From IMG/VR virus record IMGVR_UViG_3300005056_000001, positions 248,001 to 312,000 of that record: a DNA stretch of 64,000 nt. One strand, 5' to 3'. The notes beneath the pieces were generated by a model, which did not search any database, was not told the origin of the DNA, and saw nothing but the letters and a program-made list of their open reading frames with translations. Numbering within the stretch: position 1 is the first letter of the stretch; every line of letters begins with the position of its first letter. Below, piece by piece: positions 3,569-53,535 of the stretch. Made by a program: the position numbers and the translations under genes.

Positions 3569-3922
3569 ATGACAGTAGCAGTCCGCAACAAAAATAACAT
3601 GGAAAAAACAATACAGGCAGCAAAGTACAAGTTCATAGAACTCATGAAGGGTTCTTTGTTTAAGGACGACAAACCCTCGTCATCAAGGATTTTTGGGTAT
3701 GTAATGATGCTCATAATTTTCTTGTTTTCCGTGGTATTTATTGCCACCGAAATAGGAAACGCCATACTTTCTTGGAAAAACGGAAATGTTTATGTACCTT
3801 CATGGCAAACGATTACATTTTTTGGGATGTGTTTGACGCAAAAGTTGACATTACTTGGGATTTACAAAAAAGCAGAGAGTCTTATTCCTAAAAAAACAAT
3901 CGAAAAAAAGCCTGTCCAATAA
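3569..3922 (+). CDS. putative holin / two-TM membrane protein
   Basis: DDKPSSSRIFG followed by two hydrophobic segments and a basic C-terminus; GTACATA box at 3509-3515. Confidence 0.45.
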   Translation: MTVAVRNKNNMEKTIQAAKYKFIELMKGSLFKDDKPSSSRIFGYVMMLIIFLFSVVFIATEIGNAILSWKNGNVYVPSWQTITFFGMCLTQKLTLLGIYKKAESLIPKKTIEKKPVQ

Positions 3923-3972
3923 CAAAAGGACTCACAGGTTAATGAGAATTACATAACTAAACATTGAAATAA

Positions 3973-8996: not shown

Positions 8997-10082
8997 ATGA
9001 AACCATACGATAAATTATTAGAAGAGATTTTCGGGGCATTCTTAGAAATGATGGGATGTGTTATCGACGAAAAAATTATAAAAAATGTTGTTCAGTACTC
9101 TAGTGTCACCATAGAAATGGACGATAGCGAATACTCGGAAGACCCGTCGAACACTTACTATGGAAACGTTAAATACATCAGCACACACCTAAAATATTTT
9201 AATGCTGTTATTGCCGTATACACCAATACAGGAGGTGAATTTTGTATGGGTACATGGGAATTCACCACAAAGGGTCGAGAGGTATTATTTCCTATGATTG
9301 TTCGTGCAATGGGCATAGTAAATAGTACACATATACCAAAGACACTAAAGGTTTGGTGTGGTGACGAGGAGGAGTATGACGGAACATATGGTCTACACCC
9401 CATAAAACAGGTCGAAAAGGCAAAGTTTGACATTAAAAGGTTGCTAGACGACCCCCAATACGAAAAGAATGTATATACCAACAGCACTGATTACCTGTGT
9501 ATGATCAAGGCGTATGCAGAACTGAAGGGTGTGGTTGTCGAATATAGTCTGAACATGAGAGAATCCGACTTTGACGGTATCATGAAAAACTTGGGTGGTG
9601 GTATGGCAGAGGTCGAAAAGATAGAAACCGAAATCAAAGAAAAGAACTTTGCAAAAAAACGTTGTAATATTTTTGACAGGCTCAAGGAAGTATATGACAT
9701 GGACAATCGGGTCTATGTGTCACATCTACACTTCATTGCCTACCTGACCAACCACGATTTCACAAAGGGTAATTTTAAATGGTCATACCTAAAGAATATA
9801 ATCAACGGATTAAGCGGTGATCAGACATTGGACTTGTATTGTCGAATTTTTATTGGAACGCTTGATGTTATTTTACTAGGAGCCGTAGAGAACGCCGACG
9901 TGACCAAGAAGGATTGGTTTTATGATATCCTAGAAAATGCGGTGGTGCCTAAAATACACAAGGAATCACTTTTGGAACAGTGTAAGTCTTGGTGTACACA
10001 CAGCAATGGCGAAGAGGGTCTACGTGAAAGAATGTATGAATGGATCAAGGATATTGATTGGACTAAAACACAGATATTATGA
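8997..10082 (+). CDS. multi-domain hypothetical protein containing an ABC-ATPase C-terminal-like (LHP...TNS) domain
   Basis: Residues around LHPIKQVEKAK...VYTNSTDYLCMIKAY align by eye with the whole of ORF 40896..41234. Confidence 0.65.
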   Translation: MKPYDKLLEEIFGAFLEMMGCVIDEKIIKNVVQYSSVTIEMDDSEYSEDPSNTYYGNVKYISTHLKYFNAVIAVYTNTGGEFCMGTWEFTTKGREVLFPMIVRAMGIVNSTHIPKTLKVWCGDEEEYDGTYGLHPIKQVEKAKFDIKRLLDDPQYEKNVYTNSTDYLCMIKAYAELKGVVVEYSLNMRESDFDGIMKNLGGGMAEVEKIETEIKEKNFAKKRCNIFDRLKEVYDMDNRVYVSHLHFIAYLTNHDFTKGNFKWSYLKNIINGLSGDQTLDLYCRIFIGTLDVILLGAVENADVTKKDWFYDILENAVVPKIHKESLLEQCKSWCTHSNGEEGLRERMYEWIKDIDWTKTQIL

Positions 10083-22940: not shown

Positions 22941-24758
22941 ATGTTCAGTTTTTTTAATCCAAAGAAATCACCTGTTATTAAAAATATATCCGAAAAAAAG
23001 GATAGCAACAATGTTAATGTCAATGTAACACTTAGCGGAACCAACGACACATTCGGGAAATCAACTACCATACAGGGCACTAACAATTTTGACCGTATTC
23101 GAAACAATTTCGGAAAGCATCAGGCGATTCTACAAAGACTTTCTCAGTACAACAGTAACATACAGGCTGTAACCACGGACACATTGTCCAAGATGGAGAC
23201 AATGCCCAAGGCCCAAGAATTCATTCAGGACTATTATAGTATGCTTTCGAATCACGAAACCAAGTCAAGGAAGGGTCGGGGCGGCGGATTCAATAACAAT
23301 ACAGGATATGAGCAACAATTAAGACTAAAACAAGTTGCTGCATTGGATGAGGTTGACGAGGTATTAACCAAGCTGACAACAGAATTGACTATGCCAACAG
23401 AGGGCGAAAAACACTTCTTCCAATATGATATAGACAGGGTCGAGCTAGAAAAGGCAGAGGTCAAGAAAGAATACATCGAAAAAATAGAAAAAATCGCCAC
23501 AGATTTTTTACCAAAAATATACCGTGAGTTAGGATTTAAGTTGAATGGGGCAAACAATGCCATGCACAATTACCTAATAGAGGGTCGAAAGGCCTATGAG
23601 TTGATTTATGACGACCCCGACAAACCCAAAAAGTTTTTACATGCCATTGAAATTGATGCACAGAGCCTAACAAAATTTTACCATAATGGTAGTGTGTTTT
23701 GGAAGTATGAATTTAGTCTTGATTCTAAATACGCAAGAACCGTGGCGCAATACAATAATGCACTGCTCAAAAACAAGCAGTTTCAAAACGGATCCCGAAT
23801 CTTGTATGATTGGCAAGTAAATCATGTTGATTGGTACGAGGACAGCGTAAAAGGGCATATCAGTTATGTTCATAGCATGATGAAATCATCCAATATATTA
23901 CGTATCATGGAAGAAACTATGATTGTGTGGTATGTCACAAACTCGTCTTATAGAACCGTCCATAAAGTTCCCACACAAGGATTGATGGGTAGCTATGCGG
24001 CCACAGCCGTACTACAAGAAAAAGAGGAATATACAACAGACATTGAATATACTTCTGCCACAGGCGAGATTATGATTGAGGACTCTGCCAACATACCATT
24101 TGAGAGAACCACATTTATAAGCGACGGCGAATATGGAGAGCCCTCTATTGAGGTGTTGAATGACAGGGGGGCCGCACTCGACAAAACGGATGTGGTTGAT
24201 TACTTCAAGGGCAAACTATACCGTGCATCCAAGATGCCACAGTCAAGGTTTGACGAGGAGGGAGGTGATTGGGCAATCGACCCGACTCGTGCACAACGGG
24301 AAGAGGTCTATTTTGCAGGATTCTGTCACAGAATTCGCAATACATTTGCACCGCTATTGCTAAAACCCTTGTTCATACAGATCGGTCTAGAAATCCCCGA
24401 ACTCGAAGGCGATGTTACGATTTTTGACAATATAAACATAAAGTGGAACAGTGTCAATCAATTCAAACAGTTGCTAGACTTGGCAGTGCTCACAGAGAAG
24501 CTAGGATATATTGAAAAGATACGGGACTCTTTAGTGATGACCACTATTGATGGTGATGATATTCCTATTATCCCATGGAGGTTATTGCTCCAACAACATT
24601 TGGGATACACCGCCGAAGATCTTGAAATAATCGAAAAGGCCCGATACGAAGAAACAGAAAAGTTATTAATCGAACGTAAGAATATTAATGAACTGAAAAA
24701 AAAGTACGGAATTGACGACGACGAGGAAGGTGGTGGTCGTGGTGGCAGATTTCGTTAA
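22941..24758 (+). CDS. portal vertex protein (T4 gp20-like)
   Basis: YLIEGR, NILRIMEETMIVW, DVVDYFKGKLYRASKMPQSRF, REEVYFAGFCHRIR are gp20 motifs. Confidence 0.92.
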   Translation: MFSFFNPKKSPVIKNISEKKDSNNVNVNVTLSGTNDTFGKSTTIQGTNNFDRIRNNFGKHQAILQRLSQYNSNIQAVTTDTLSKMETMPKAQEFIQDYYSMLSNHETKSRKGRGGGFNNNTGYEQQLRLKQVAALDEVDEVLTKLTTELTMPTEGEKHFFQYDIDRVELEKAEVKKEYIEKIEKIATDFLPKIYRELGFKLNGANNAMHNYLIEGRKAYELIYDDPDKPKKFLHAIEIDAQSLTKFYHNGSVFWKYEFSLDSKYARTVAQYNNALLKNKQFQNGSRILYDWQVNHVDWYEDSVKGHISYVHSMMKSSNILRIMEETMIVWYVTNSSYRTVHKVPTQGLMGSYAATAVLQEKEEYTTDIEYTSATGEIMIEDSANIPFERTTFISDGEYGEPSIEVLNDRGAALDKTDVVDYFKGKLYRASKMPQSRFDEEGGDWAIDPTRAQREEVYFAGFCHRIRNTFAPLLLKPLFIQIGLEIPELEGDVTIFDNINIKWNSVNQFKQLLDLAVLTEKLGYIEKIRDSLVMTTIDGDDIPIIPWRLLLQQHLGYTAEDLEIIEKARYEETEKLLIERKNINELKKKYGIDDDEEGGGRGGRFR

Positions 24759-24816: not shown

Positions 24817-26898
24817 ATGGAAAAAAAGATAATAGTCCAAACGCATCCCAAAATGTTTTTAGGAGAACACAAAGCAGACTCCATAAGAATTGATGAGTCT
24901 AGTGGCAAAGCATACACAATGTTATGGGAGAGTTCTGCAAAACCCTTAAAATACTATATTCCTGAAGGAATGTTATTGATCGAGGGTGTTATTGGGGTCG
25001 CCGATATATTAAACGAAAATGAACGAATGTACCCATTTGCTCAGTACGAGGAACATATCGAAAAACTACAACCAAGCATCCGAAGGGGACTGTACGGGGA
25101 AATGTTTCATCCTGACGGTATGGAGGTCAATATCGACCGTGCAACACACCGAATCCTAGAGATAAGAATCGAGGCAAACGGAAACGTGTGGGGGAAATTT
25201 TTGCTATTAGACAACAAGCACGGACTACAATGCCAATCAATCGTAAGGAGTGGTGGTTGTTTGCCTGTGTCTTCTCGTGGTTATGGTTCTATTGACGAGA
25301 ACAATGTCGTAACACTAGACGTACTTGCAACATGGGACACTGTCAATGAGGGTGGATTCTCGCAGGCATTAATGAGAGTGTCGGAGCAGTTGACCGAAAG
25401 CAAAAAGAACGGCTACACAACATATGTTTTTGAAAGCAAAAAAGGTTCGTACAAAACGACAACCGAGGCTGTCGAACAAACCAATAAAACGGTTTCAAAA
25501 CTAGAATCAAAAGTAACATCCCTTGAGTCTGCCCTAGAAAAAAGTAACACGCTTATGACTAAAATGTTGGCAGAATTTAAAGAGGGTGCCAAGAAGAAGG
25601 ACGAGGACGGCGATGACAAGTCTGACGACAAAAATACGTCTGACGACAAGAAAAAAGAAGACAAAGACGATAAGTCTGACGACAAAAATACGTCTGACGA
25701 CAAGAAAAAAGAAGACAAAGACGGTAAGTCTGACGACAAAAATAAGTCTGACGACAACAAGAAAAAAGACGATGTCGGCGCAGACAGCAAATCCGACAAG
25801 GAAGGTGTTAAAGAAATGTTGGCAAATCATGAGGCACGACTTCAGGTTATGGTGGCAGAACGATTTTTGTCTTTTGTGACAAAAATTAAGATTTTTCTTA
25901 AAGAAGATTATACGAATTTTGTTTCTGCAAACACAATCGAAACAATCAAAGAAAACAATACCAAATTAGCAACCGAGTTTGATAGTATTTTTGAGGCAAA
26001 CATACGGGTGGTTCTTGATGAGGTAAAGGGTTACATAGGAAATATCGAAGTTTCTGAGAGTGTCCCAACAATTACCCCACGTACATCGGTTACCGAAACC
26101 AAAGGCTTGATTATTGATATTGTTTCCAAGGCAGTTTCTCATAGTGAGGCAAGTACCAAAGAAAGTGTCGGGAAAATTTTCCATGTAGTTTCTGAGAGCG
26201 TGGATGCACTTGCTGTGAGAGTGGCACAATTGGTCGAGACGTCGGAGACGGTTGACAAAGAAGCAATCAAACAGATTAGAGGTTCAATTTCTTCGATTAA
26301 CAAAAAAATTGCAGAAAGCGTGATTGGTATTAATCGCACTATCACAGAGAATTCAGCGGCATCAAAAGAACAATCAGAAACGCTTCAATCAAAACTTGTA
26401 GAGTCCGAAAATAAAAACTTGTTGCTCAAGAAGTGGATGGAAAACGAATACTTGGTAGAGAATGTTTTGCCGCTATTTAACGAGGATGCAAAAAATTACA
26501 AGGCCGATGAATTGGTTCATGATTCCTATGTCAGCGTCAAAGAGAAATTAATCAATAAAAATGTCACACATGAACATGTTAGCGAGATTGACGAGATGTT
26601 GAATGATGCCGATAATATGACATTCAAGGAGAGCACCCAAATCACCGAGGGTTTTGAGTCAACAAAGATCTTCCGACAAATGCCAAATGAATATACAGGA
26701 CTTTGGGCCACAACAAGCCAAGCTGTTAAATCAAAAATTGAGGAATCCGCCAAGGTAAGAAACTTCACCAATGAAAAAAGCATCAAGGCTTTTTGGGAAG
26801 CACAGGAGTCTAAAATGTTTCATGTTGAAGTAGCAAAGCCAAAAGACATTCCTAGTAATACTACAGAACCCGTTTATAAACTCGATCCGAATCTATAA
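24817..26898 (+). CDS. prohead protease fused to scaffold/core domain (T4 gp21+gp22-like)
   Basis: NENERMY, GEMFHP, VSSRGYGS, TWDTV..GFSQA (gp21 catalytic motifs) followed by about 490 aa of coiled-coil rich in xxE sites. Confidence 0.9.
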   Translation: MEKKIIVQTHPKMFLGEHKADSIRIDESSGKAYTMLWESSAKPLKYYIPEGMLLIEGVIGVADILNENERMYPFAQYEEHIEKLQPSIRRGLYGEMFHPDGMEVNIDRATHRILEIRIEANGNVWGKFLLLDNKHGLQCQSIVRSGGCLPVSSRGYGSIDENNVVTLDVLATWDTVNEGGFSQALMRVSEQLTESKKNGYTTYVFESKKGSYKTTTEAVEQTNKTVSKLESKVTSLESALEKSNTLMTKMLAEFKEGAKKKDEDGDDKSDDKNTSDDKKKEDKDDKSDDKNTSDDKKKEDKDGKSDDKNKSDDNKKKDDVGADSKSDKEGVKEMLANHEARLQVMVAERFLSFVTKIKIFLKEDYTNFVSANTIETIKENNTKLATEFDSIFEANIRVVLDEVKGYIGNIEVSESVPTITPRTSVTETKGLIIDIVSKAVSHSEASTKESVGKIFHVVSESVDALAVRVAQLVETSETVDKEAIKQIRGSISSINKKIAESVIGINRTITENSAASKEQSETLQSKLVESENKNLLLKKWMENEYLVENVLPLFNEDAKNYKADELVHDSYVSVKEKLINKNVTHEHVSEIDEMLNDADNMTFKESTQITEGFESTKIFRQMPNEYTGLWATTSQAVKSKIEESAKVRNFTNEKSIKAFWEAQESKMFHVEVAKPKDIPSNTTEPVYKLDPNL
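25612..25772 (+). repeat. 57-bp coding tandem repeat (DDKSDDKNTSDDKKKEDK)
   Basis: About 2.7 near-identical copies of aagtctgacgacaaaaatacgtctgacgacaagaaaaaagaagacaaagacg. Confidence 0.9.
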
Positions 26899-35326: not shown

Positions 35327-35722
35327 TTACACATCAATAACCTCAAACTCGTCTTTGTCAATCCATCTGTATTTCGGGAAATGTACAAGATTTTTGCTCA
35401 TTGATCCGTCGATATTTATTCCACACACGGCATAATAAAATCTTAGACGCCCCTTGGTGTCAATCCAAGGGCTGATGTCAGAAACAATACCTTCTACATC
35501 CACAAAAGGATCCATAAGCGAGCCACCATCGTCCTTACATTTAAACACATTTACACGAACACCAATTCCCACAGGGGCAAATTGAATACACTGTCGTAAA
35601 ACATCTTTTTTCTGCTGAGCCAACTCGTCGTCTTTCTTGTTGAGTTTTGATAGTGCCAAATTATTGTCCTCAATTTCGCCTTCGATTACACGGTATTGTT
35701 TAAAGAAGTCTTCAAATTGCAT
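35327..35722 (-). CDS. hypothetical protein
   Basis: 131 aa, overlaps the ligase stop. Confidence 0.7.
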   Translation of the reverse strand: MQFEDFFKQYRVIEGEIEDNNLALSKLNKKDDELAQQKKDVLRQCIQFAPVGIGVRVNVFKCKDDGGSLMDPFVDVEGIVSDISPWIDTKGRLRFYYAVCGINIDGSMSKNLVHFPKYRWIDKDEFEVIDV

Positions 35723-36926
35723 TTTTATGGTTTTTAATTTCTATTTTCAAGGCCTTCAAAATATTTTTTGCCTTCATTTCCCAAATGGCATCCTTGAACA
35801 CACTTTCGGGATTTAATCTAAGCGAGTGTATTGGCCCAAGGAAAACACGCAAATGTTTCTTGTGATCGGTGGCTTTTTGGGCAAATGTGTAAAAATCCTT
35901 GTCACACATTTCTTTACCGTCAAGGTTGGCTACTTTTTCTTTTAATTGGTCAAACACCTGTTCGCAGCGTGCGATTAAAACATCGTACGGTGTCTTTAGC
36001 GGGTAAATTTCCTTGGCCAACAAAGGAAAGTACCCAATAATAGTTTCCTCTTCTCCTGCCCTGATAGCATCAACAAACCTCCACTTGGAGGTTATTGTTT
36101 TGTATGTTTCGTTCCATTGGTGGTGTATAACATAGGAGTTTGACTTTATCTTAAGACGGTTGCCGTGTTTGTCAACCACAACATATCCCTCAAAATTTTG
36201 ATCGCCCAACTTGACATTGTGTAAAGATTTAAGTATCTCATCCTTTCCTTTGTAGGGATACCTTTTTGGACGGTCGCAATTAAACACCATTGCAATCATA
36301 TCCAATTCATCTGTGTCATATTCCTGTAGGGTGTCCATCTCCCTTGCTGCCAACAGAACAATGTTGCCTTGTTGATAGGTGTTAATGACCTTGTTGTCTG
36401 CACTAATACATTCAAAAACATAGGTCACACCTTTTTTTGAATGTGTGAGGTCAACATGGTTTTCTTTGGCGATACGATTGAATAGGTGAGTATAATCAAA
36501 GTCTTGCTCAACCAATATGCTATGGTTATGCTTGTCACGATAGCTAACCTTATCAATTGCATACCCACTCTTTTTTGTGCCAACAACCCACTCGTTTATG
36601 ACATTATCATAGTAGCGTTGTATCATGGCACCATCCCCTTTATCCTCCCCGACCGCACTTTCCCAATCCAAAACACCTTTATGACCTGCCTTATACTCGC
36701 CAAAACGATACAAGGGCATGGACATTGCCTCGAACTTTTCGCCAACACGTTTTATAATAACCCCACGACATTCATTTGTGGTCGGGTTCTTGGGTGTCTT
36801 GAGTTGGTCATAGTGTAGAATTATTCTGTGTTCAGACTCTCTAAGCTCAAGTCTATATTTATCGACCGTGGCCTTCAGTCCTTTTTGGTTGAGCTCCTTG
36901 ATTATGTTAAGTTCCTTCTTTTCCAT
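35712..36926 (-). CDS. RNA ligase (T4 Rnl1-like)
   Basis: ECRGVI, motif I EDKGDGAM (KxDG), FECIS..N, EGYVV, RLKIKS..Y. Confidence 0.88.
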   Translation of the reverse strand: MEKKELNIIKELNQKGLKATVDKYRLELRESEHRIILHYDQLKTPKNPTTNECRGVIIKRVGEKFEAMSMPLYRFGEYKAGHKGVLDWESAVGEDKGDGAMIQRYYDNVINEWVVGTKKSGYAIDKVSYRDKHNHSILVEQDFDYTHLFNRIAKENHVDLTHSKKGVTYVFECISADNKVINTYQQGNIVLLAAREMDTLQEYDTDELDMIAMVFNCDRPKRYPYKGKDEILKSLHNVKLGDQNFEGYVVVDKHGNRLKIKSNSYVIHHQWNETYKTITSKWRFVDAIRAGEEETIIGYFPLLAKEIYPLKTPYDVLIARCEQVFDQLKEKVANLDGKEMCDKDFYTFAQKATDHKKHLRVFLGPIHSLRLNPESVFKDAIWEMKAKNILKALKIEIKNHKNAI

Positions 36927-39141: not shown

Positions 39142-39229
39142 ATATATACAGCAAATCATTCAAGGACTCTTACGAGCTATCAAATTGGGTTGTAGAGACC
39201 AAAGATTATTAATATTACTAGAAAATAAA

Positions 39230-39856
39230 ATGAACCTAACAAACAACGAACTACAACTCCTGTCTAACATGACAGGGAAACAATTCAACGACCTAAAAGA
39301 CATGGTTGAACATTCCAATACGAATGGTTTTAAACACACACTAACAGAGGTCATTGTACGGATGAAAAATGTACATTATGGTGCATGTCCCGAAAACACA
39401 ACCGAGTTGGAACGTCTGTTTTTGAATCCCGACACAACAACCAATTGGTTTGGAGTGGTTTGTGAAAATTTCCGTAAGGAAAAATCCATTATCAGATCAC
39501 ATGGCATTAAAAAATGTGACTTGGTTCCTTTAAAAAAAGGATGGCTTGACACATTTTCCGAAAATAAGGCAGAGCGTATTACGCTAATGTGCATGATAGA
39601 CATTGCCCTTTATAGATTGGAGCAGTTTAAAGCAAAACAAAAGATTTCGGGTGTATCCAAATTGTCGAATCCTGTAACAAAAGAAGAATGGGTCGAGGAT
39701 TTTTTGACAGAATATATTGTTAGACACTCCAACGAACACGAAAATACAAAGGATCGTAAGACCAACCCATTTTATCTAATAGGAGGCAATCCATATGCAC
39801 TACTCGAAAACGAGGACAATCTTGTAAGATTCAGAAAAGTGTTAAGGAAATGTTAA
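39230..39856 (+). CDS. hypothetical protein
   Basis: Likely start MNLTN at 39230. Confidence 0.7.
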   Translation: MNLTNNELQLLSNMTGKQFNDLKDMVEHSNTNGFKHTLTEVIVRMKNVHYGACPENTTELERLFLNPDTTTNWFGVVCENFRKEKSIIRSHGIKKCDLVPLKKGWLDTFSENKAERITLMCMIDIALYRLEQFKAKQKISGVSKLSNPVTKEEWVEDFLTEYIVRHSNEHENTKDRKTNPFYLIGGNPYALLENEDNLVRFRKVLRKC

Positions 39857-39912
39857 AGTCGTGTCTTATCAAAGACAGGGCTTTTTTTATTGGAGTATTT
39901 GTTGTACATTTG
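39841..39912 (+). promoter_or_regulatory. GTTAA-N6-GTTAA repeat + hairpin + TACATTTG -7 box
   Basis: gttaaggaaatgttaa (39841-39856), hairpin aaagtcgtgtctt/aagacagggcttt, tacatttg at 39905. Confidence 0.55.
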
Positions 39913-39958
39913 ATTTATCAAAGGATGAAACATTAAGGAACAGCAAAACACATATATC

Positions 39959-40348
39959 ATGTCAAATACACCATTAGAACAAGCAAAGAAACAATTAGAG
40001 AAGGCTCAGGTAACGTATAATTACTACAACACCATTGAGGAGCTTTTGGCTTTTATGGAATCTTTGGTATATCCAACGGTCAATTGGTGGGCAGGGGAAA
40101 CTTACTCAAAAACAGGGATGTTAGTTTTTGATTCTTTTGATTTCAGGGCAATTATAGAAGATGAAAGTAAGTACTGTAAAACAGGACTTGGCATAAGATA
40201 TTATTCGTCTAAACTAAGCTGTGGTGTGTCAACAGAAGACCTTGGCACCGAACCCGAGTACAAAAAATGGTTACTCTCAAACAGAAGAGTGCTGAATAAA
40301 TTATACAAGGCTTATGCACAAGCCATAAAATTATTCGAAAATAGTTAG
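39959..40348 (+). CDS. hypothetical protein
   Basis: 129-aa ORF. Confidence 0.7.
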   Translation: MSNTPLEQAKKQLEKAQVTYNYYNTIEELLAFMESLVYPTVNWWAGETYSKTGMLVFDSFDFRAIIEDESKYCKTGLGIRYYSSKLSCGVSTEDLGTEPEYKKWLLSNRRVLNKLYKAYAQAIKLFENS

Positions 40349-40498
40349 GATATTTTGAATTCTTAACATTTTGTTTTATATTACAACAACCAAGGGATAT
40401 TTATATTTCACATTTGAAATTTTACTTAAAAATTAGTATTGATCGCTATTATTGAGTGTGTGTATAAATACTCCTTTGGTTTTAATAATTCGAAAAAC

Positions 40499-40891
40499 AT
40501 GCAAATGCTCAAAAAAGAATTAGTAGAAGAAAACGCCCTACTAAAGGCCCAAATAGAAAAACTAACAAAACCTAAAACAACGGGTTTGTATAACAAGCTT
40601 TTTGGTCTTACGGCGGAGGATATCGAAAAAGAGGACGAGGAAGAAGGAGAGGAAGGTGATGGCTCATTTCAATTGATGCATGATCTATTAGACACATATC
40701 ACGGCTGTAAAATGATTCGTGAAGACTCTGAAAACGTTTCCGAGACCGAGGGAGCAATTATCATCGAGGATGATTATGATATGCCATTACCGATGTCCAC
40801 ATTGGGTGATGCCATTAAGGAAATAATTTCCCGAAAGGATATTGTTTGGCTTGCGAATCGTTTGGAGGATATTATTGAAAATGAAATATAG
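40499..40891 (+). CDS. hypothetical acidic protein
   Basis: Likely start MQMLKK at 40499. Confidence 0.7.
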   Translation: MQMLKKELVEENALLKAQIEKLTKPKTTGLYNKLFGLTAEDIEKEDEEEGEEGDGSFQLMHDLLDTYHGCKMIREDSENVSETEGAIIIEDDYDMPLPMSTLGDAIKEIISRKDIVWLANRLEDIIENEI

Positions 40892-40895
40892 CATA

Positions 40896-41234
40896 ATGAA
40901 AAAATTTAAGGTTTATACAGGCACCGACATCGAAGATATGTGTGGACGCCAATTGCACCCGCTAAATGAGGTGAAGTCTGCAAAGGCTACTATTGACACG
41001 TATTTGAAGTGTCACAAAGAATGCAAGGGTGACACCAAAACAAAGGCTGTCGTAGATTACATATTCACAAACAGCCCCGATTTTGTGGCTGCCATAAAAG
41101 AATATGGCGAAACAAACGATTTGTTTGTTGAATTCTACCTAAATGGTGTTTCTAAGGGGTATGATATCGAACCGATTTTTGAAGACTTTAACAGGTCATT
41201 CGATGAGGGTCAGAAATTAATTACACAAAAATAG
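40896..41234 (+). CDS. stand-alone ABC-ATPase C-terminal-like (LHP...TNS) protein
   Basis: RQLHPLNEVKSAK...IFTNSPDFVAAIKEY...EFYLN...DIEPIFEDFNRSF; paralogous to a domain in 8997..10082. Confidence 0.65.
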   Translation: MKKFKVYTGTDIEDMCGRQLHPLNEVKSAKATIDTYLKCHKECKGDTKTKAVVDYIFTNSPDFVAAIKEYGETNDLFVEFYLNGVSKGYDIEPIFEDFNRSFDEGQKLITQK

Positions 41235-41308
41235 TAAGACACTGCCTAGGAAAGACATTGGATTTTGTTGATTCGAAATCCTGATCAGTACATTTTATAC
41301 AAAAAAAT

Positions 41309-41887
41309 ATGCAAATTAAAATAACAGACTTTTACTATCCATTGGCCAAAGAATGGATGTGGGACTACTGCACACCGCTAGGAAAATTTATTGACTGTCA
41401 GGGTGTCAAGTGGGATTTGGGGATATTGATAAAATCAGAGGGTGATTGGTCTGCTGCCTGTGTTTATGGCGACACCGACGGTCATTATAATTCGGGCTCT
41501 TCTTATGGAATTTTATCCCAACCAAAAAGAATGGATTTTATTGATGAAATGATTAATCGGGCAGTAAAGGAAGGGTTGATAAAAGACGAGAGAGTAAAAA
41601 CCAAGGAAGAGGCCGAAATTTGGCTTGACAATTTCTCTAGCACCATAGAGTTCTGTGAGAATATTGATCAACCAATCAGCGTGTCAGGGTTTTTAAAACC
41701 GTTCAAGAAAATGCTTGCCGACAAAAAATATATTTTCTTGGACACGATATTATTTTCTATGGTCTTCAAGTATTATAAGATGGAATACTTGGAAGCATTT
41801 CGGGAAATGTTACTACCCCACAAATCAGAGCTAAGGATGTTTAACTTATTGGAGCTCAATTTAATCGTAAGAACCCCACCAAAATAA
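41309..41887 (+). CDS. hypothetical protein
   Basis: 192-aa ORF. Confidence 0.7.
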   Translation: MQIKITDFYYPLAKEWMWDYCTPLGKFIDCQGVKWDLGILIKSEGDWSAACVYGDTDGHYNSGSSYGILSQPKRMDFIDEMINRAVKEGLIKDERVKTKEEAEIWLDNFSSTIEFCENIDQPISVSGFLKPFKKMLADKKYIFLDTILFSMVFKYYKMEYLEAFREMLLPHKSELRMFNLLELNLIVRTPPK

Positions 41888-41889
41888 TT

Positions 41890-42666
41890 ATGCAGTACAA
41901 TAGAGAGACCATTGACAGTGTCCTTAAACTAAGAAGTGTTGCTGACCCGTACTCGGATATATTAGAAATCTGCAAGGAGAATAGTTCTCGTCTTGGTAAA
42001 TACATGGATAAGTATGAAATGTTATTCAGAATAATTTCATGTCTAGGCAAGGAAAGTTTTAACGATTTTTTGGAGACCGTTATTGGAGACCTGCAACACG
42101 GCACGATAGATTGTTTGTTCGAGGCATTAAGCAAGGGTCTTAGACAATGGGATGTGTTCGACAACGGAGACTTGGACATGCTTTTTAGATGTATGCTATT
42201 CGAAAGTAAAATACCAAAAATTGTGTTTATGGAGGTCTTTGTTGATGGTAAAAACAGACGTGTTCATGACGACTTCAAAAAAAGATTTGTTGGCGACCTA
42301 AAAGAAGAACACCTGTCCAATCGTGTTTGGGGGAGTCAGAAGGCAAAGGATTGCGTCCTGAAGGATTACAATAACATACACTTTGATTATGTTAAAATGT
42401 TGTTGTCTGAAGCCAATAAGATTTCATTTCCTGCCTATAAAATCTCTGAGAAGATTAGGAAAAAGTTTGGTATCGAACTATTTCCTTTAATTTTAAGCAG
42501 TGGACAGGTCGGTATGTTGAAAAAGCCCAAGCCAAATGGTAATCACTTTTACATGGCAAGCAGCGAGGGGGTTTATTACACCCTTATAGGAAGTCCGACA
42601 CATTATTTCAAACACGGTATTACCATAAATATTGAAAATTTAAATATATCAATCAATGAAAGATAA
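41890..42666 (+). CDS. hypothetical protein
   Basis: 258-aa ORF. Confidence 0.7.
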   Translation: MQYNRETIDSVLKLRSVADPYSDILEICKENSSRLGKYMDKYEMLFRIISCLGKESFNDFLETVIGDLQHGTIDCLFEALSKGLRQWDVFDNGDLDMLFRCMLFESKIPKIVFMEVFVDGKNRRVHDDFKKRFVGDLKEEHLSNRVWGSQKAKDCVLKDYNNIHFDYVKMLLSEANKISFPAYKISEKIRKKFGIELFPLILSSGQVGMLKKPKPNGNHFYMASSEGVYYTLIGSPTHYFKHGITINIENLNISINER

Positions 42667-42961
42667 AGAGTACATCCTGTGTGCGGCAACTTGGTACAAG
42701 GAGGTCGAAAAACCTGTTCATAGCCCGATTAACATAACAGAGGGTGTTGTTGTTTGTGGATTTAGACACCCAAATGTAATAGGCATCGTTCATGCACTAT
42801 CCACGAAACCAAGTTCTGCGTTTGACTATGCCAAGGTTGTGCAAGGGTTTCTGTCAAGCAAAAACAGATTCCTGACAAGAGAGGAGGCTGCCGACATTGC
42901 ATTCGTTGCAGGACAAATTGACACCAAAATTAAGCGTTTATATAGCGAAGATTTATATTAA
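42656..42961 (+). CDS. conserved phage protein (QGF..RFLTREEA..IA..AGQ...LYSEDLY family)
   Basis: ILCAA, G.RH and QGFLSSKNRFLTREEA...LYSEDLY form a widespread phage motif set; function unknown to me. Confidence 0.7.
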   Translation: MKDKEYILCAATWYKEVEKPVHSPINITEGVVVCGFRHPNVIGIVHALSTKPSSAFDYAKVVQGFLSSKNRFLTREEAADIAFVAGQIDTKIKRLYSEDLY

Positions 42962-48625: not shown

Positions 48626-51577
48626 TTATACGATTATAACAGTACCGATTTCGCTTGTGCTATTGAATGTTGTTGTTCGTATAACAACCTTCTCGGCAAC
48701 GCTGCTAACAATGACTTCAATGTCTATTACCAACATTTGTGCAGCAAGAACGTCACCATCGTTGTTGGTCGAATCAACTATAGATCTTCCGAATGTAAGT
48801 GCACCATTTGCCAAGTATCGTTCCAATACAGAATCCACACGGGCCTTAACTGTTGCACGCAATTGTTCGGTATTCAACTTGCCCAATGCACCCTTTGCGA
48901 TAGGTGTCACTTCTAGTTGTAGCACATTCAATGTTTCACGTACATGGAGCGATTTAAGTGCCGTGCCGTCCTGATTCAAGGTTCGGTTTCCCATTACAGT
49001 AAAGTCTTGCATAATAGGATTTACACCAAGACGTTCTAGGATTGCCCTGTCATCATTGGTCAATTCCATGCCGACCTTTCCGAGTCCTGATGCAGCAACC
49101 CGAAAATCTGATCCGAAAATCGGGATGTGTCCTTGTCCTGCCAACCATTTAGCAGCAAACAAGTTACTCACGATTGGAGCCATAGGCATTTTAATGTCTC
49201 TGCCATTGTCTTTGATCGTTGCATTAGGAAAATAAGTTGCACCATAAGCCGCACCTTGTTGTTTTGTCGGGAGCGTGAATAATTGACTATAAGGCAACAA
49301 TAGATTACCACCATCCTCAAAATGTTCTATGTTAATTTTGGTGTCTGTTGGTGAATCCTTGAAAAATGGATCCGTAGAGTTCTTGAATGTTTTTACAAAT
49401 GGCGTGTTTATCAAAGATGTAATGCCACCCTGACGGTCTCTCGCCACAACAGTAAACTGTGATTTTATATTTGCTGTTGGGTAACTCTCAAACGAATCAA
49501 CCAAATAACTGTATGTTTCATATTCCCTGTCGGTTAGTAAGTCCAATAATTGTCCGCTAATTGTACCATTTAACACATCTTCCAATCGTGTTGGTGTACC
49601 GTTAACAAATTGGTCATTACGAACAGCAAGCCCTTTCATTGAAATTGGATTAAATTGCTTTGTGGTATCTACAACCCTATTCAACTGTAACATGTAGTTG
49701 GCATTGGTAGAAGGCTCACGATACAGAATAATCTCAAGTGAGTTGTCTAGTGTCAAGACGGAAAAATTGCTCCTTGCACCAACAGATGTTGGTACGGATA
49801 CATCGTCATCTCCGCCATACAACGGACGATCAAACTCGGCCACGAAGTAGTTTAGCTCGACCGAAAATGTTGGATTCGCCAAAACAAGTGCCGCAATCGC
49901 AGCGTCATCAATATCAGGGAACGCTATGACGGTTCCACCAACTTGATCTTTTGGATAACCAAAAGTCGGGTCGGTCGGGTCAATGCCTGTGTAGTTATAT
50001 TCAACAGGCAGTCCGAGACTAACACCACCCAAGTATTCCCAATTACCGCTAATAGTATTAAATGTGGCCAATGGAGCCCCAACACTATCAAGCGGAAACG
50101 TCGAAGTGTGTAGTCCGCCAAAAACAACCTTTTTCCCAATAAAATTGAAACGTGTTACTGTTGTTGGGTTGCCATCCATTCCAAGGAATAATGTGCCTGT
50201 TTTTACGGCTGTGGCATTCGTCATGATACACGACCGTCTTGGGTCGTAATCTTGGCCACTAATAGAGATAACGTTTGAGCTAGGTTTCGAGTAATCAAAA
50301 TCTGCCACGACAGGTGTCTCTAACCCTAAAAGCATGGGATTGTTATGGACAATATGATTTCCAATAATTGTAAAATTATTTACATCTTCCTGTGCCGTTA
50401 TTTTTCCGCTCTCAAGGACGTATGCCTGTGACAACGTATTACTATCGTTTGACAACGAGTTATAGTTTGTCGTCACAAAGTCGGCATCAATACTCATTGC
50501 CGAATACTTGTCGCTTGGTGTGTAGTCCATGTTTGAACCCGTCCAATCAATAGTTTTTGTTCCATAAAACTCCATTGGGATAGGACGTTTGCCGTTAGAC
50601 AGCGCAGATGCCGTTGCAACACTTGAAAGTTCTGCCAATGTCGGAGGTTCAAAATCTGCCGCATTATCCAATACATCTTCGTTTATTTTACAGATCAATC
50701 CTGTCAAATCAGAGTCGATATTAATCAAGTTGTCAATCGCCAAGGTTGCAGATGATTGGTTTGTTAATGTTGAAATCAACGAACCTTCATAAGAATTTAA
50801 AAAGCGTGCATCCTCTTCGTTTGATAAACGTTGTAACGCATCAATATCACGTCCATTTGCATCAATAACATCGTTTCTAAGGTTTCCCGCAGAATTAAAC
50901 AGGTAAGCCACAGAGGATGGAATACCAAATGTCAAATCAATGTTAAACACAAAAACCTCCACAAACGTGTCATTCAACAACATTGTTGGCTCTATGGATT
51001 CAGGCAGGGCTTGGTCAAGCAATTCGTAATATTCCCCAATAGTTTGTTTGTAAATAACATTCTTTAGTGGTCGCACAAAAACGGTTAGGTCTTTATTTCC
51101 GATATTTACAATATGCAACAAATCAGTGTCGTTGCTAGGAATGATATTTTCTTCATCAACAAACCAATTTCTGTCGGTATTAAAGTAGTTGGTATATGGT
51201 CTGTCAGAAAGCACACTGTTTCCGTTGTCATCCATTTGTATGTTAAGACCAATTGCTTGTACAACATCCAATGTGTCATCATAACTTCTGACATTCATTA
51301 CCTTTATCGGGCCTTGCGCAAGCATGATCTCGGCAGAACGATGGAAAAAACCGCCTCTACGTTCTAGTCGTCTGTCAATATCACCAAATAACTGAACAAA
51401 TTGTGGGTATGTATCAATACGAATTATTTTATTGGTCACACCTTTTTTGGATTGTCCAATCAATAGTCTATATCCATCAAGCTCTGCCGCTGCACTGAGT
51501 GGCGGAGAAGTGCGCTCAATAAAGTACAAACCCGCCGCTTGTCTACTTATTTGTTGTAATCTAACACTTAGTGCCAT
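48626..51577 (-). CDS. contractile tail sheath protein (T4 gp18-like)
   Basis: AGLYFIE, IGQSKKG, FVQLFG, LERLGVNPI, GNRTL, LHVRE; GTACATA at 51616-51622. Confidence 0.9.
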   Translation of the reverse strand: MALSVRLQQISRQAAGLYFIERTSPPLSAAAELDGYRLLIGQSKKGVTNKIIRIDTYPQFVQLFGDIDRRLERRGGFFHRSAEIMLAQGPIKVMNVRSYDDTLDVVQAIGLNIQMDDNGNSVLSDRPYTNYFNTDRNWFVDEENIIPSNDTDLLHIVNIGNKDLTVFVRPLKNVIYKQTIGEYYELLDQALPESIEPTMLLNDTFVEVFVFNIDLTFGIPSSVAYLFNSAGNLRNDVIDANGRDIDALQRLSNEEDARFLNSYEGSLISTLTNQSSATLAIDNLINIDSDLTGLICKINEDVLDNAADFEPPTLAELSSVATASALSNGKRPIPMEFYGTKTIDWTGSNMDYTPSDKYSAMSIDADFVTTNYNSLSNDSNTLSQAYVLESGKITAQEDVNNFTIIGNHIVHNNPMLLGLETPVVADFDYSKPSSNVISISGQDYDPRRSCIMTNATAVKTGTLFLGMDGNPTTVTRFNFIGKKVVFGGLHTSTFPLDSVGAPLATFNTISGNWEYLGGVSLGLPVEYNYTGIDPTDPTFGYPKDQVGGTVIAFPDIDDAAIAALVLANPTFSVELNYFVAEFDRPLYGGDDDVSVPTSVGARSNFSVLTLDNSLEIILYREPSTNANYMLQLNRVVDTTKQFNPISMKGLAVRNDQFVNGTPTRLEDVLNGTISGQLLDLLTDREYETYSYLVDSFESYPTANIKSQFTVVARDRQGGITSLINTPFVKTFKNSTDPFFKDSPTDTKINIEHFEDGGNLLLPYSQLFTLPTKQQGAAYGATYFPNATIKDNGRDIKMPMAPIVSNLFAAKWLAGQGHIPIFGSDFRVAASGLGKVGMELTNDDRAILERLGVNPIMQDFTVMGNRTLNQDGTALKSLHVRETLNVLQLEVTPIAKGALGKLNTEQLRATVKARVDSVLERYLANGALTFGRSIVDSTNNDGDVLAAQMLVIDIEVIVSSVAEKVVIRTTTFNSTSEIGTVIIV

Positions 51578-51636: not shown

Positions 51637-53535
51637 CTACGAATCTTCATATTTAAGCCTATTGCGCAAATCATCAAAATTATAGGCAAACCTCCAATCA
51701 ACACCCGCCATTTTTTTTTGTGCATAATATTGCTCAATGAAAGCCGTAAGTCCACTATTCCTTGACAGTATCGTAAAACCTAGATGTAAGTATGGCACAA
51801 CATTGTCGTCATTGCCCAATTCTGCTTGGTACGTTCCTTTCTTGTTTACTTGGAAAAATCCTATTTGTTCTATAGTTTTCTCGTCGGATATGTCAAATAA
51901 ATTATTTTCCATTGCAAGCTTGAATGCATTGACAGACACTTTTTTAATCGCCCTGTTTGTTGTTAATCCTACCGCACGTCCGCCAACCCGTTTTCCTTTC
52001 GTGTTTCGGCTACTCCGTTCACCGTACCTAAGAAAACAGGCAGGAGGGATAAAAATATTATTCTTCCTCATTGCCTCGTTTATTTGAGTCATGAAGTAGT
52101 CACCATAGGTGTTTCGTTCTATGATGATTCTAATATTTTCAAACGTTGTGAATGTTGCCAACGTATGCACGATAAGTGTAGGCATCTCGGTTTCTAACGG
52201 TATGTCGTTTGCCTCCAAAACAAATTCTTGCCTGAAGGATATTTTACTTTTGAAATTCCCGTCCTTTCGGTGTTGGACAGACAAAAAATGTGCGGTTGTT
52301 GAATCGCCGCCAATACCCTCTGCAAGGTCTATGATCACCACATAGTGTTTATCCCTTAGTTTTTCGGCATCGGGCCTAAATCTAATCTTCGGACTGTATT
52401 TCTCAATACCCCTAAATCTTAAGTCATGGGTTTTGAACGGAACTTTTTTCTCGTCCAACTCACGCATTGTAAATGGAGACAACAGCTTATTCAGTTGGGT
52501 ATCAAAAGACATCTCAAACTGAATCTTGAATTTTTGAAGCGTAATCTTACTGATCATTTTCTTTGCCCACTCAACATCACGTGAGGGTATTTGCCACCAA
52601 TAAACCGTTGATGGTCTGTAAGAGTTTTTACCCTTGACAGCCCCGTCATAAAGCTCATAGAATAAGTCTTTACCATTTGGAGTACTTGTGATAATAAGCT
52701 TGGGATTCTCTACTGCTGCCTGTGCAGGTGCCGCATTTGACAGAAATTCTGCCTGCTTTTCCTTGTTCCCATCAAAGCACAGTGCAAACTCATCAATATA
52801 CAGGGTGTGCACGGTAAGACCGTTGATTGCATCCTTGGTACAGGGTGCCGCCAATATCGAACAACCGTTATCGAACTTGATGTTCTTCTCGTTCCATATC
52901 TCAACACCTGCTTTCATATAAAAAGGAAGTCTGTAATAAATTTCCTTTATTTTGTCCAATACCTCATTGGATGTCTTTTGTTTGTTGGCAAGTATTGCAA
53001 CATTTCTATTCTTGTGAAACATGACATTCCACAGTATATATATAGCAGCCGTTGTTGTTTTTGAGGCCTGCCTCGACCATGCCTGTATGTGGTCATCGTG
53101 TCGTAGGTATGACACCAATTGCTTTAGCTGATGTGGAAATAAATTACATAGCTGATAACTTTGGTCACGTTGTTTTAGGTATGCAAAATTACGGGCAAAA
53201 TGCAACATGTTGGTCATGCACGAAACCATCTCCAATGTTTCGCTATTGGACGGTCGATACACCAACTCTGCCCGTTTTAGTTTTGGGTTATTGTCAAAAA
53301 ATGGGGTTTTCTTAAGGGGCTGACCAACAGCAATCGCATCAATGGCCAATTTTGCACTCTTTGATGTCCATACAATTGCATCCACAGCACCGTTGCCTGT
53401 AAGTGGCTTACGTGGATCATAATGTTTTATGCCACCCTTATCTGCCTTTATTTTCTTTCGGGCTTTTTTTCTTGCACGCTTGACGGGCTTTGTGACCGTC
53501 GTGGTGTTTTTTGCCTTCTCGGGTGGTATAATCAT
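51637..53535 (-). CDS. terminase large subunit (T4 gp17-like)
   Basis: LFPHQ, SRQASKTT (Walker A), ILANK, YIDEFA (Walker B), ITSTPNG, DLAEGIGGD, IERN..G, NDDNV. Confidence 0.95.
   Translation of the reverse strand: MIIPPEKAKNTTTVTKPVKRARKKARKKIKADKGGIKHYDPRKPLTGNGAVDAIVWTSKSAKLAIDAIAVGQPLKKTPFFDNNPKLKRAELVYRPSNSETLEMVSCMTNMLHFARNFAYLKQRDQSYQLCNLFPHQLKQLVSYLRHDDHIQAWSRQASKTTTAAIYILWNVMFHKNRNVAILANKQKTSNEVLDKIKEIYYRLPFYMKAGVEIWNEKNIKFDNGCSILAAPCTKDAINGLTVHTLYIDEFALCFDGNKEKQAEFLSNAAPAQAAVENPKLIITSTPNGKDLFYELYDGAVKGKNSYRPSTVYWWQIPSRDVEWAKKMISKITLQKFKIQFEMSFDTQLNKLLSPFTMRELDEKKVPFKTHDLRFRGIEKYSPKIRFRPDAEKLRDKHYVVIIDLAEGIGGDSTTAHFLSVQHRKDGNFKSKISFRQEFVLEANDIPLETEMPTLIVHTLATFTTFENIRIIIERNTYGDYFMTQINEAMRKNNIFIPPACFLRYGERSSRNTKGKRVGGRAVGLTTNRAIKKVSVNAFKLAMENNLFDISDEKTIEQIGFFQVNKKGTYQAELGNDDNVVPYLHLGFTILSRNSGLTAFIEQYYAQKKMAGVDWRFAYNFDDLRNRLKYEDS

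What the first reader, a model, noticed from the sequence alone, without database searches (positions are those of the whole stretch)
40896..41234. Stand-alone C-terminal piece of a defence-type ABC ATPase, present twice: candidate decoy of anti-phage ATPases
Seen: ORF 40896..41234 and the middle of 8997..10082 align by eye over about 95 aa (KVY/W.G...LHP..(E/Q)V..AK...TNS.D....IK.Y.E...VE..LN...D...I). Known: AAA_15/AAA_21 (AbiEii/OLD-type) ABC ATPases end in ..DEPExHLHP..Q.......itsHSpy....ik.Y.....fYl......IF..l..pf. This ATPase class forms the sensor or scaffold in PARIS (AriA), Septu/retron PtuA and Gabija GajA. Here the Walker A half is missing, the Walker B acidic pair is eroded, and the H-loop His is Asn in both copies. 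Inference: the phage keeps a non-catalytic fragment that could poison oligomer assembly or titrate the effector of such systems. I know of no described anti-defence family of this type.
Basis: partly seen in the sequence, partly recalled or inferred. Interest (0 to 1): 0.8.

Follow-up and report, generated by a model that had tools for sequence, protein, structure and literature searches.

The report
Phage copies of defence ATPase tail
A huge phage carries two copies of a small protein that is a catalytically dead copy of the last ~100 residues of a Bacteroidota ABC ATPase which works with a nuclease in a probable anti-phage system; it most likely acts as a molecular mimic that disarms that system, a kind of counter-defence I could not find described and that nobody has tested.

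Summary
ORF 40896..41234 (112 aa) and residues ~113-215 of ORF 8997..10082 are paralogues: BLASTP E 2e-8, and E 4e-35 and 3e-18 against a family profile built without them. They belong to an unannotated family: 163 hits among 50%-identity representatives, mostly 95-110 aa. Every context examined was phage-like or a viral contig.

The homology claim also holds. The family profile matches the last ~100 residues of ~430-aa AAA_15/AAA_21 ABC ATPases (hhalign 99.1%, E 1e-18; reciprocal HMM hits). That ATPase clade is almost entirely from Bacteroidota. It is nearly always followed by an overlapping ~170-aa gene with a PD-(D/E)xK-like motif. Its best defence-library match is HEC-02, a validated ABC ATPase + NERD nuclease system.

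The phage copies lack Walker A, the signature motif and the Walker B acidic pair. They carry Asn at the H-loop His position in 116 of 136 domains. They keep the D-loop HP and the C-terminal extension, and are under purifying selection (dN/dS 0.12-0.18). Longer truncated intermediates exist in phage contigs. The window's genes lack Shine-Dalgarno motifs, which fits a Bacteroidota host.

The decoy function is inferred, not shown. Foldseek against PDB found no ABC ATPase.

The parts
40896..41234 (+). Gene for the 112-aa stand-alone ATPase-tail protein (P0001), member of a phage-borne family of ~100-aa proteins
   Evidence: ORF. Leave-out family HMM E 4e-35. hhalign of family against ATPase clade: 99.1%, E 9.6e-19. 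AF2 pLDDT 93.9, order beta-alpha-alpha-beta-alpha-beta-beta-alpha-alpha.
40953..40961 (+). Codons for L20-H21-P22, the counterpart of the LHP that follows Walker B (D-loop region) in the ATPases
   Evidence: H present in 118 and P in 132 of 136 family domains. Aligned with the HLHPQ of the ATPases.
41067..41084 (+). Codons for T58-N59-S60-P61-D62-F63, the H-loop counterpart with His replaced by Asn
   Evidence: Asn in 116 and His in 12 of 136 domains. The ATPases have SHS(T/P)D(F/M) here.
41163..41192 (+). [quoted passage not shown]
   Evidence: This extension lies beyond the end of the Pfam AAA_15/AAA_21 models.
8997..10082 (+). Gene for a 361-aa protein (P0014) that carries a second, more diverged copy of the domain between unannotated N- and C-terminal parts
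   Evidence: ORF. BLASTP E 2e-8 to the small protein. No Pfam or convincing PHROG hit. P0139 is a relative sharing part of the N-terminal extension.
9333..9641 (+). Domain copy inside P0014 (residues ~113-215). It keeps LHP and TNSTDY, but the C-terminal IEPIF.DFN motif is degraded (DFDGIMKNLG).
   Evidence: Leave-out family HMM E 3.4e-18. Alignment. Direct hhalign to the ATPases is not significant (E 0.21), so its link to the ATPases runs through the small family.

Best explanation
The 112-aa protein, and the domain inside the 361-aa protein, are phage-kept, catalytically dead copies of the C-terminal subdomain of a Bacteroidota ABC ATPase. That subdomain runs from the Walker-B strand through the D-loop helix, the H-loop strand and helix and the two terminal strands to the C-terminal extension. 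In bacteria this ATPase is encoded in a two-gene cassette with a small PD-(D/E)xK-like protein. The cassette is related to the validated defence system HEC-02 (ABC ATPase + NERD nuclease).

Most likely mechanism (inferred): the phage protein mimics the part of the ATPase that holds or activates the nuclease partner. It would bind that partner and uncouple or sequester it, so the system cannot fire during infection.

Shown: homology, loss of catalytic motifs, phage-like or viral context in every place examined, purifying selection, a truncation series, and the conserved bacterial gene pair.

Inferred: that the bacterial pair is a defence system, that the phage infects Bacteroidota, and that the protein binds a component of the pair and blocks it.
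For: Homology:
- The family profile hits ~430-aa AAA_15/AAA_21 ATPases at their last ~100 residues, with whole-library E 2e-6 to 3e-4.
- hhalign of the small family (115 sequences, no ATPases) against the ATPase clade gives 99.1%, E 9.6e-19.
- A small-family-only HMM hits all 81 bacterial ATPases and no other ORF in those loci.
- An ATPase-only HMM hits 90 small proteins.

Source clade:
- There are 369 relatives in species-representative genomes; the top 80 are almost all Bacteroidota.
- 74 of 81 loci have a conserved 160-180-aa gene abutting or overlapping the ATPase stop. These form one BLAST cluster with a D...(E/D)xK...K motif.
- The ATPase's best PADLOC match is HEC-02A (E 1e-25 to 1e-29). 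The partner weakly matches HEC-02B.
- HEC-02 needs both genes for defence (bioRxiv 10.1101/2024.01.29.577857).

Phage side:
- Contexts are long one-directional arrays of small unannotated ORFs with a few phage-typical families such as T4_Y16D, plus IMG/VR viral contigs.
- The only GenBank phage hit is the 636-kb LR756504.1. Genomes above 634 kb in that study were predicted to infect Bacteroidetes (PMC7162821).
- 0 of 48 window genes have a Shine-Dalgarno-like motif, against 6.4 +/- 2.5 at random positions.

Selection and origin:
- dN/dS is 0.12-0.18.
- There is a truncation series of 229, 160, 122 and ~100 aa. The 229-aa phage form is sister to the ATPase clade in the tree.

Analogy for mechanism: in PtuAB the nuclease PtuB docks on the C-terminal extension of the ABC ATPase PtuA (PMC12819146). 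The C-terminal extension motif is the best-kept segment between the phage family and the ATPases.
Against: - There is no experimental or co-folding evidence of binding.
- The defence role of this Bacteroidota pair is only by homology. HEC-02A matches are partial, and HEC-02B matches are weak (2-3 of 14 members).
- Genomic contexts of the pair are variable rather than clear defence islands.
- Foldseek of the confident model found no ABC ATPase in PDB.
- The residues shared with the ATPase are largely hydrophobic, so they may reflect core packing rather than an interface.
- The second copy (P0014) has lost the IEPIF.DFN motif that the docking idea relies on.
- The host assignment is indirect. 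The Bacteroidota -33/-7 promoter motif is not enriched.
Confidence: 0.4

Rival explanations
1. Same target system, different mechanism. The fragment is a poison subunit. It displays the D-loop and H-loop face of the ATPase, docks onto the Walker-A/signature face or an oligomer interface of the host ATPase, and blocks ATP-dependent head engagement or assembly.
For: The most invariant residues of the small family are the HP of the D-loop LHP (H 87%, P 97%) and the H-loop-position Asn (85%). In ABC ATPases these lie at the nucleotide-sandwich dimer interface (established knowledge of the fold). The captured region is the best conserved part of the ATPase besides the P-loop.
Against: Without the rest of lobe I, the fragment exposes central strands and may not present that face natively. 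There is no binding data. Conservation of HP could be structural.
Confidence: 0.2
2. An exapted module with a job unrelated to defence. After capture, the ATPase tail became a general protein-binding or adaptor domain used in the phage's own biology. The similarity to the ATPase reflects ancestry only.
For: Family members are fused to varied extensions: unannotated N- or C-terminal parts, CxxC-rich segments, a coiled-coil-like N-terminus and a tandem duplication. The second window copy sits inside a 361-aa protein and has lost the C-terminal motif.
Against: The main family keeps near-identical motifs to the ATPase (S.S.DFVSAIKY..EK and DIEPIF..FN) across more than 100 diverged clusters. That is easier to explain if both still meet the same partner. 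The family's location among early-type small ORFs also argues against a housekeeping role.
Confidence: 0.2
3. One half of a split phage ATPase. The tail complements an N-terminal (Walker A) half encoded elsewhere in the 368-kb genome.
For: Only 64 kb of the 368-kb contig was available, so an N-terminal half elsewhere cannot be excluded. One viral contig (L092) carries a tail with intact Walker B and H-loop.
Against: The Walker B acidic pair and the H-loop His are lost in most members, so no ATPase could be rebuilt. No N-terminal half occurs in the window or in the 10-20 kb around six other members. IMG/VR has essentially no full-length members of this clade.
Confidence: 0.05
4. Decaying remnants of phage-borne ATPase genes, with no function.
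For: Longer truncated forms exist.
Against: dN/dS is 0.12-0.18. There are 163 profile hits among 50%-identity representatives, and about two-thirds of the 148 retrieved are 90-125 aa. Specific substitutions are conserved: Asn at the H-loop position and an invariant Gly after strand 1. The predicted fold is confident.
Confidence: 0.03

Closest known systems
HEC-02 (PADLOC; Payne et al. 2024, bioRxiv 10.1101/2024.01.29.577857): ABC ATPase HEC-02A + NERD / PD-(D/E)xK nuclease HEC-02B
   Same: The bacterial relatives of the phage protein are ABC ATPases whose best defence-library match is HEC-02A (E 1e-25 to 1e-29). They are followed by a small protein with a D...(E/D)xK motif that weakly hits HEC-02B. 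This is the same two-gene logic.
   Different: The matches cover only the C-terminal half of the ATPase. The partner is ~170 aa and mostly below threshold. The clade is from Bacteroidota and its defence activity is untested. The phage protein itself matches no PADLOC model.
PtuA-PtuB (Septu / retron Ec78) ATPase-nuclease complex
   Same: PtuA is among the nearest solved structures to the ATPase clade by sequence. Its nuclease docks on the ATPase's C-terminal extension (PMC12819146), which gives a precedent for the proposed docking surface.
   Different: Similarity is confined to the generic Walker B to H-loop region. The PtuA extension is helical and unrelated in sequence. PtuB is an HNH nuclease, not PD-(D/E)xK.
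Virus-encoded Cas homologues acting as anti-CRISPRs (bioRxiv 10.1101/2023.06.24.545427)
   Same: The concept is the same: a virus keeps a homologue or fragment of an immune component and uses it against the system it came from.
   Different: The immune system and fold differ, and nothing is tested here.
Phage antitoxin mimics and direct inhibitors of ATPase-type systems (Gad1/Gad2 against Gabija; ICP1 Gp145 against DarT; ICP1 Gp205 against an OLD nuclease; reviewed in PMC13728456)
   Same: Small phage proteins that bind and neutralise an effector or complex.
   Different: Nothing in the passages of that review I read presents these inhibitors as homologues of the ATPase they inhibit. There is no sequence relation to this family.
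AAA_15 / AAA_21 (OLD, AbiEii-type) ABC ATPases
   Same: Homologous over the last ~100 residues.
   Different: The phage proteins lack the P-loop, the signature motif, the Walker B acidic pair and the H-loop His. They do not reach any Pfam threshold.

Membership tests
AAA_15/AAA_21 ABC ATPase (as an enzyme) | Walker A P-loop (GxxGxGKS/T) | tested here: not met
   Absent from both window proteins. No hit to the N-terminal 330 positions of the ATPase HMM anywhere in the window.
AAA_15/AAA_21 ABC ATPase (as an enzyme) | Walker B hhhhDE acidic pair | tested here: not met
   The ATPases have IIDEPEAHLHP. The small family has (I/V)xVYxG...LHP with no conserved acidic pair. Intermediates show IENPEN, IQYPEN and IKYPES.
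AAA_15/AAA_21 ABC ATPase (as an enzyme) | H-loop histidine | tested here: not met
   Asn in both window copies and in 116 of 136 domains. His in 12, including 7 ATPase tails that were part of the set; 5 small proteins keep it.
AAA_15/AAA_21 ABC ATPase (as an enzyme) | Passes the Pfam gathering threshold | tested here: not met
   No Pfam family even at E 10.
AAA_15/AAA_21 ABC ATPase (homology of the C-terminal subdomain) | Significant profile-profile or HMM match to bona fide members, in register with LHP and the H-loop | tested here: met
   hhalign 99.1%, E 9.6e-19. Reciprocal HMM hits. The targets pass AAA_15/AAA_21 thresholds.
AAA_15/AAA_21 ABC ATPase (homology of the C-terminal subdomain) | Three-dimensional similarity to the C-terminal part of solved ABC ATPases | tested here: inconclusive
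   The model is confident (pLDDT 93.9), and the order of its secondary-structure elements agrees with the ABC core as I know it. However, Foldseek against PDB gave no hit below E 0.1; the top hits were de novo P-loop-fold designs at TM ~0.3. No solved structure of this ATPase clade exists.
HEC-02-type defence system (applies to the bacterial relatives, not the phage protein) | ABC ATPase matching HEC-02A | tested here: met
   HEC-02A is the best PADLOC hit for all 6 ATPases tested, E 1e-25 to 1e-29, but the match is partial.
HEC-02-type defence system (applies to the bacterial relatives, not the phage protein) | Adjacent NERD / PD-(D/E)xK partner matching HEC-02B | tested here: inconclusive
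   A conserved adjacent partner with a D...(E/D)xK...K motif occurs in 74 of 81 loci. Only 2-3 of 14 hit HEC-02B, best E 1.7e-4. No Pfam family is shared by more than one of the 14 members, and none reaches E 0.01.
HEC-02-type defence system (applies to the bacterial relatives, not the phage protein) | Protects against phage, with both genes required | not testable with these tools
   Shown for the E. coli-tested HEC-02 only.
Known anti-defence protein families | Sequence match to a described inhibitor family | tested here: not met
   No significant PHROG hit at all (best E 0.12, all to 'unknown function' families). No PADLOC or PDB sequence match. Literature searches found no such family. AntiDefenseFinder, dbAPIS and EVADES profiles were not available to search.
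   AriA, PtuA and GajA models score far below HEC-02A and NsnB for the related ATPases. The small family hits none of them directly.

The most novel reading that the evidence does not exclude
A widespread family from uncultured phages, likely infecting Bacteroidota, consists of captured and catalytically stripped C-terminal subdomains of a host ABC ATPase. It would be the first known inhibitor class for ABC ATPase-nuclease defence systems that works by mimicking the ATPase's own effector-docking or assembly module. The truncation series (229, 160, 122, ~100 aa) would record how a defence gene was turned into a counter-defence gene.
Probability: 0.45. Interest if true: 0.85.

Novelty: new variant of a known kind. 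Interest (0 to 1): 0.72.

Why it matters
ABC ATPase plus nuclease pairs (Septu, PARIS, Gabija, Lamassu, the HEC systems) are among the commonest bacterial defences. Few phage inhibitors of them are known, and among those I could find none is a homologue of the ATPase itself.

If this family works as proposed, three things follow:
- It gives a sequence-traceable example of a phage turning a piece of a host immune protein into an inhibitor.
- It points to the C-terminal subdomain as the functionally critical surface of an uncharacterised defence pair that occurs across Bacteroidota, including gut genera such as Bacteroides and Prevotella.
- It suggests a simple search rule for new anti-defence genes: stand-alone, motif-dead fragments of defence proteins in phage genomes.

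It would also supply a tool to switch that system off in Bacteroidota phage work.

Tried and rejected
- Direct annotation of both window proteins with Pfam, PHROGs, PADLOC and PDB sequences found nothing usable.
- The ESM Atlas look-up gave only low-score leads and a poor stored model.
- The first AF2 run, with a 6-sequence alignment, was mediocre (pLDDT 73.6) and its Foldseek search was empty. The 115-sequence run was confident, but Foldseek against PDB was still empty. BFVD returned only a family member from a gut Myoviridae.
- The word-index homologue search found just 4 relatives. The exhaustive HMM search was what opened the family.
- The viral-contig scan with the large alignment failed for lack of a conserved stretch. 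With the small alignment it gave 5 loci.
- tblastn of three family members against GenBank phages hit only LR756504.1, so no cultured phage carries the family.
- Neighbouring genes 39185-42961 have no informative family, so there is no guilt-by-association within the window.
- No homologue of the nuclease partner occurs in the window (E<=1) or, significantly, in the viral loci (best E 0.0045).
- The Bacteroidota promoter pattern is not enriched, and there are no tRNAs.
- Direct hhalign of the 361-aa paralogue against the ATPases is not significant.
- I considered pseudogene remnants and rejected this on dN/dS and conserved length.
- I considered a split ATPase and consider it unlikely, given the loss of catalytic residues.

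Full report
**The window.** It comes from a large myovirus. It has a T4-type portal (22941-24758), a prohead protease (24817-26898), a large terminase (51637-53535) and a weak, sub-threshold match to the tail-sheath C-terminal domain in 48626-51577. The identical gene lies on IMG/VR contig UViG_3300005056_000001, 368 kb. There is no near-identical DNA in GenBank phages.

**Checking the observation.**
- ORF 40896..41234 (ATG start, 112 aa) and ORF 8997..10082 (361 aa) exist as described.
- A profile of 113 relatives that excludes both window proteins scores them at E 4e-35 and 3.4e-18. Nothing else in the six-frame translation of the window scores.
- So there are two real paralogous copies and no third.

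**What the family is.**
- Neither protein matches Pfam, any PHROG significantly, PADLOC or any PDB sequence.
- The word-index search found only four relatives.
- An exhaustive HMM search of 1.84 billion representatives found 163 proteins at E <= 1e-3, and 94 at E <= 1e-10. About two-thirds of the 148 retrieved are 90-125 aa.
- Some carry extra N- or C-terminal parts, and one is a tandem duplication.
- Conserved positions are a Gly after strand 1, H-P (87% and 97%), V..A, S-N-S-x-D-F, E-F-x-L-x-G and I-E-x-x-F-x-D-F-N.
- Close pairs have dN/dS 0.12-0.18, so these are working genes.
- With the 115-sequence alignment AF2 gives a confident model: pLDDT 93.9, pTM 0.85, order beta-alpha-alpha-beta-alpha-beta-beta-alpha-alpha.

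**Where the family lives.**
- Three members looked up by exact sequence sit in long one-directional arrays of small unannotated ORFs. The few families present are phage-typical (T4_Y16D, DUF551) or general (Macro, CYTH).
- Five loci came from IMG/VR viral contigs: two carry the window's own gene and three carry relatives.
- The only GenBank phage hit, for three different queries, is the 636-kb uncultured phage LR756504.1.
- In the window, none of 48 gene starts has a Shine-Dalgarno-like tetramer at -20..-4, against 6.4 +/- 2.5 at random positions, and the leaders are A-rich. That is the translation-initiation style of Bacteroidota.
- The Bacteroidota -33/-7 promoter pattern is not enriched, so the host call stays indirect.

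**The link to ABC ATPases.**
- At the weak end of the exhaustive search lie ~430-aa proteins matched only at their last ~100 residues. All pass the AAA_15/AAA_21 thresholds.
- Their tails read ...IIDEPEAHLHPQWIVEYAR...(A/T)SHS(T/P)D(F/M)VSA(I/L)(K/R)...DIEPIF(E/A)(S/T)FNKS(F/L/M)(D/E)... The phage consensus reads ...QLHPLNEVKKAK...YSNSPDFVSAIKY..EK...DIEPIFEDFNRSLD.
- Profile-profile comparison of the small family (no ATPases included) with six ATPases gives 99.1% probability, E 9.6e-19, over 86 columns ending at the ATPase C-terminus.
- The small-family-only HMM hits all 81 bacterial ATPases retrieved later and no other ORF in those loci. An ATPase-only HMM hits 90 small proteins.
- The phage proteins lack Walker A, the signature motif and the Walker B acidic pair, and have Asn for the H-loop His. 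They cannot be ATPases.

**A truncation series.**
- In phage contigs there are longer forms. One is 229 aa and aligns from ATPase position 269, keeping the helix after the signature motif and IENPENKLHP. One is 160 aa, aligns from position 327 and keeps the His. One is 122 aa. Then comes the ~100-aa bulk.
- In a tree of the shared region the ATPase tails form one clade (85 of 88; the other three are mis-cut envelopes; support 0.88), with the 229-aa phage form as sister.
- The root is arbitrary. Because the region is an integral part of the ABC core, capture from an ATPase followed by trimming is the natural direction.
- IMG/VR holds essentially no full-length member of the clade.

**What the ATPase is.**
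- A scan of one genome per species found 369 relatives. The top 80 are almost all Bacteroidota (Bacteroides, Prevotella, Flavobacterium, Chitinophaga, Cytophagales and others).
- In 74 of 81 loci the ATPase gene is followed, at -25 to +10 nt in most loci, by a 160-180-aa gene. All of these fall in one BLAST cluster.
- Their alignment has invariant D, D and K plus a (E/D)-x-(K/R) pattern after a hydrophobic strand, which is a PD-(D/E)xK-like signature.
- Upstream and downstream genes differ from genome to genome. In some Bacteroides the pair sits between groEL and integrases. It behaves as a mobile two-gene cassette.
- The best PADLOC match of the ATPases is HEC-02A (E 1e-25 to 1e-29), ahead of NsnB, AriA, PD-T4-4_A, PtuA and GajA. 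The partner weakly matches HEC-02B.
- HEC-02 is an ABC ATPase plus NERD (PD-(D/E)xK) nuclease pair. It protected E. coli, and both genes were required (bioRxiv 10.1101/2024.01.29.577857).
- I therefore read the Bacteroidota pair as an HEC-02-like defence candidate. Membership is not proven.

**Mechanism.** Nothing here shows binding. Two facts guide the inference.
- First, the captured region is, with the P-loop, the best conserved part of the ATPase. It includes a C-terminal extension beyond the Pfam ABC core whose motif is kept almost unchanged in the phage family.
- Second, PtuAB is among the nearest solved structures by sequence. There the nuclease docks on the C-terminal extension of the ATPase, and that extension is needed for toxicity (PMC12819146).
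- My preferred reading (about 0.4) is that the phage protein offers the nuclease partner a dead copy of its docking module and so titrates or uncouples it.
- The alternative within the same target (about 0.2) is a poison subunit, using the near-invariant D-loop HP and H-loop region to cap the ATPase.
- A non-defence exaptation (about 0.2) is kept open by the varied fusions and by the second window copy, which has lost the C-terminal motif.
- A split ATPase and decaying remnants are unlikely.

**Weak points.**
- Foldseek of the confident model finds no ABC ATPase in PDB. It finds only a family member in BFVD.
- No solved structure of this clade exists, and a 100-residue excerpt of a larger sheet may pack differently.
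- The defence role of the bacterial pair, the host of the phage and the inhibitory function are all inferred.

**Novelty.**
- I found no described anti-defence family of this type.
- The concept has a precedent in virus-encoded Cas homologues that act as anti-CRISPRs (bioRxiv 10.1101/2023.06.24.545427).
- I rate it a new variant of a known kind, and of high interest because it is directly testable.

Noticed in passing
L092 4046-4393 (+), IMGVR_UViG_3300014826_000238: A different stand-alone 115-aa ABC-ATPase tail in a viral contig. It has an intact Walker B (LVLDEPEAHLHP) and H-loop (TTHSP), and is preceded by an out-of-frame 117-aa ORF (3727-4080). It may be a recent capture, a frameshifted gene, or a second kind of ATPase-tail protein.
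   Followed up: partly
window, 48 gene starts across 1140-63829: No Shine-Dalgarno-like tetramer upstream of any of 48 genes (6.4 +/- 2.5 expected at random), and the leaders are A-rich. This is Bacteroidota-style translation initiation. The Bacteroidota -33/-7 promoter pattern is not enriched.
   Followed up: partly
L088 487-1653 and 11474-12742: Two IS605 OrfB/TnpB-type genes flank the region of a phage contig that carries family member P0009.
   Followed up: no
proteins P0006, P0102, P0108, P0118 (family members): Domain architectures vary: a tandem duplication (P0006, 224 aa), CxxC-rich zinc-ribbon-like extensions (P0102 at the N-terminus, P0108 at the C-terminus), and a coiled-coil-like N-terminus (P0118).
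   Followed up: no
L098 8221-12921 (Bacteroides sp. GM023; same arrangement in L030 and L052): The ATPase plus PD-(D/E)xK-like pair sits directly after groES-groEL and before tyrosine integrase genes. This suggests insertion of a mobile cassette at a conserved site.
   Followed up: no
window 41007-41054 (residues 38-53 of the 112-aa protein): There is a 13-residue Lys/Cys-rich insert that the closest relatives lack. It has the lowest confidence in the model.
   Followed up: no
window 42656-42961 and 35712-36926: The first is a member of PHROG 839 (unknown function, E 4e-18), at the end of the same plus-strand block. The second is a T4-type RNA ligase / tail-fibre attachment catalyst homologue (PHROG 562, E 2e-30).
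   Followed up: no
window 8997-9332 and P0139 residues 73-110: The N-terminal extension just before the domain in the 361-aa paralogue is shared with P0139 (38% identity over 89 aa, including the domain start). It lines up, not significantly, with the post-signature helix of the ATPases, so it may be a vestige of a longer captured piece.
   Followed up: partly
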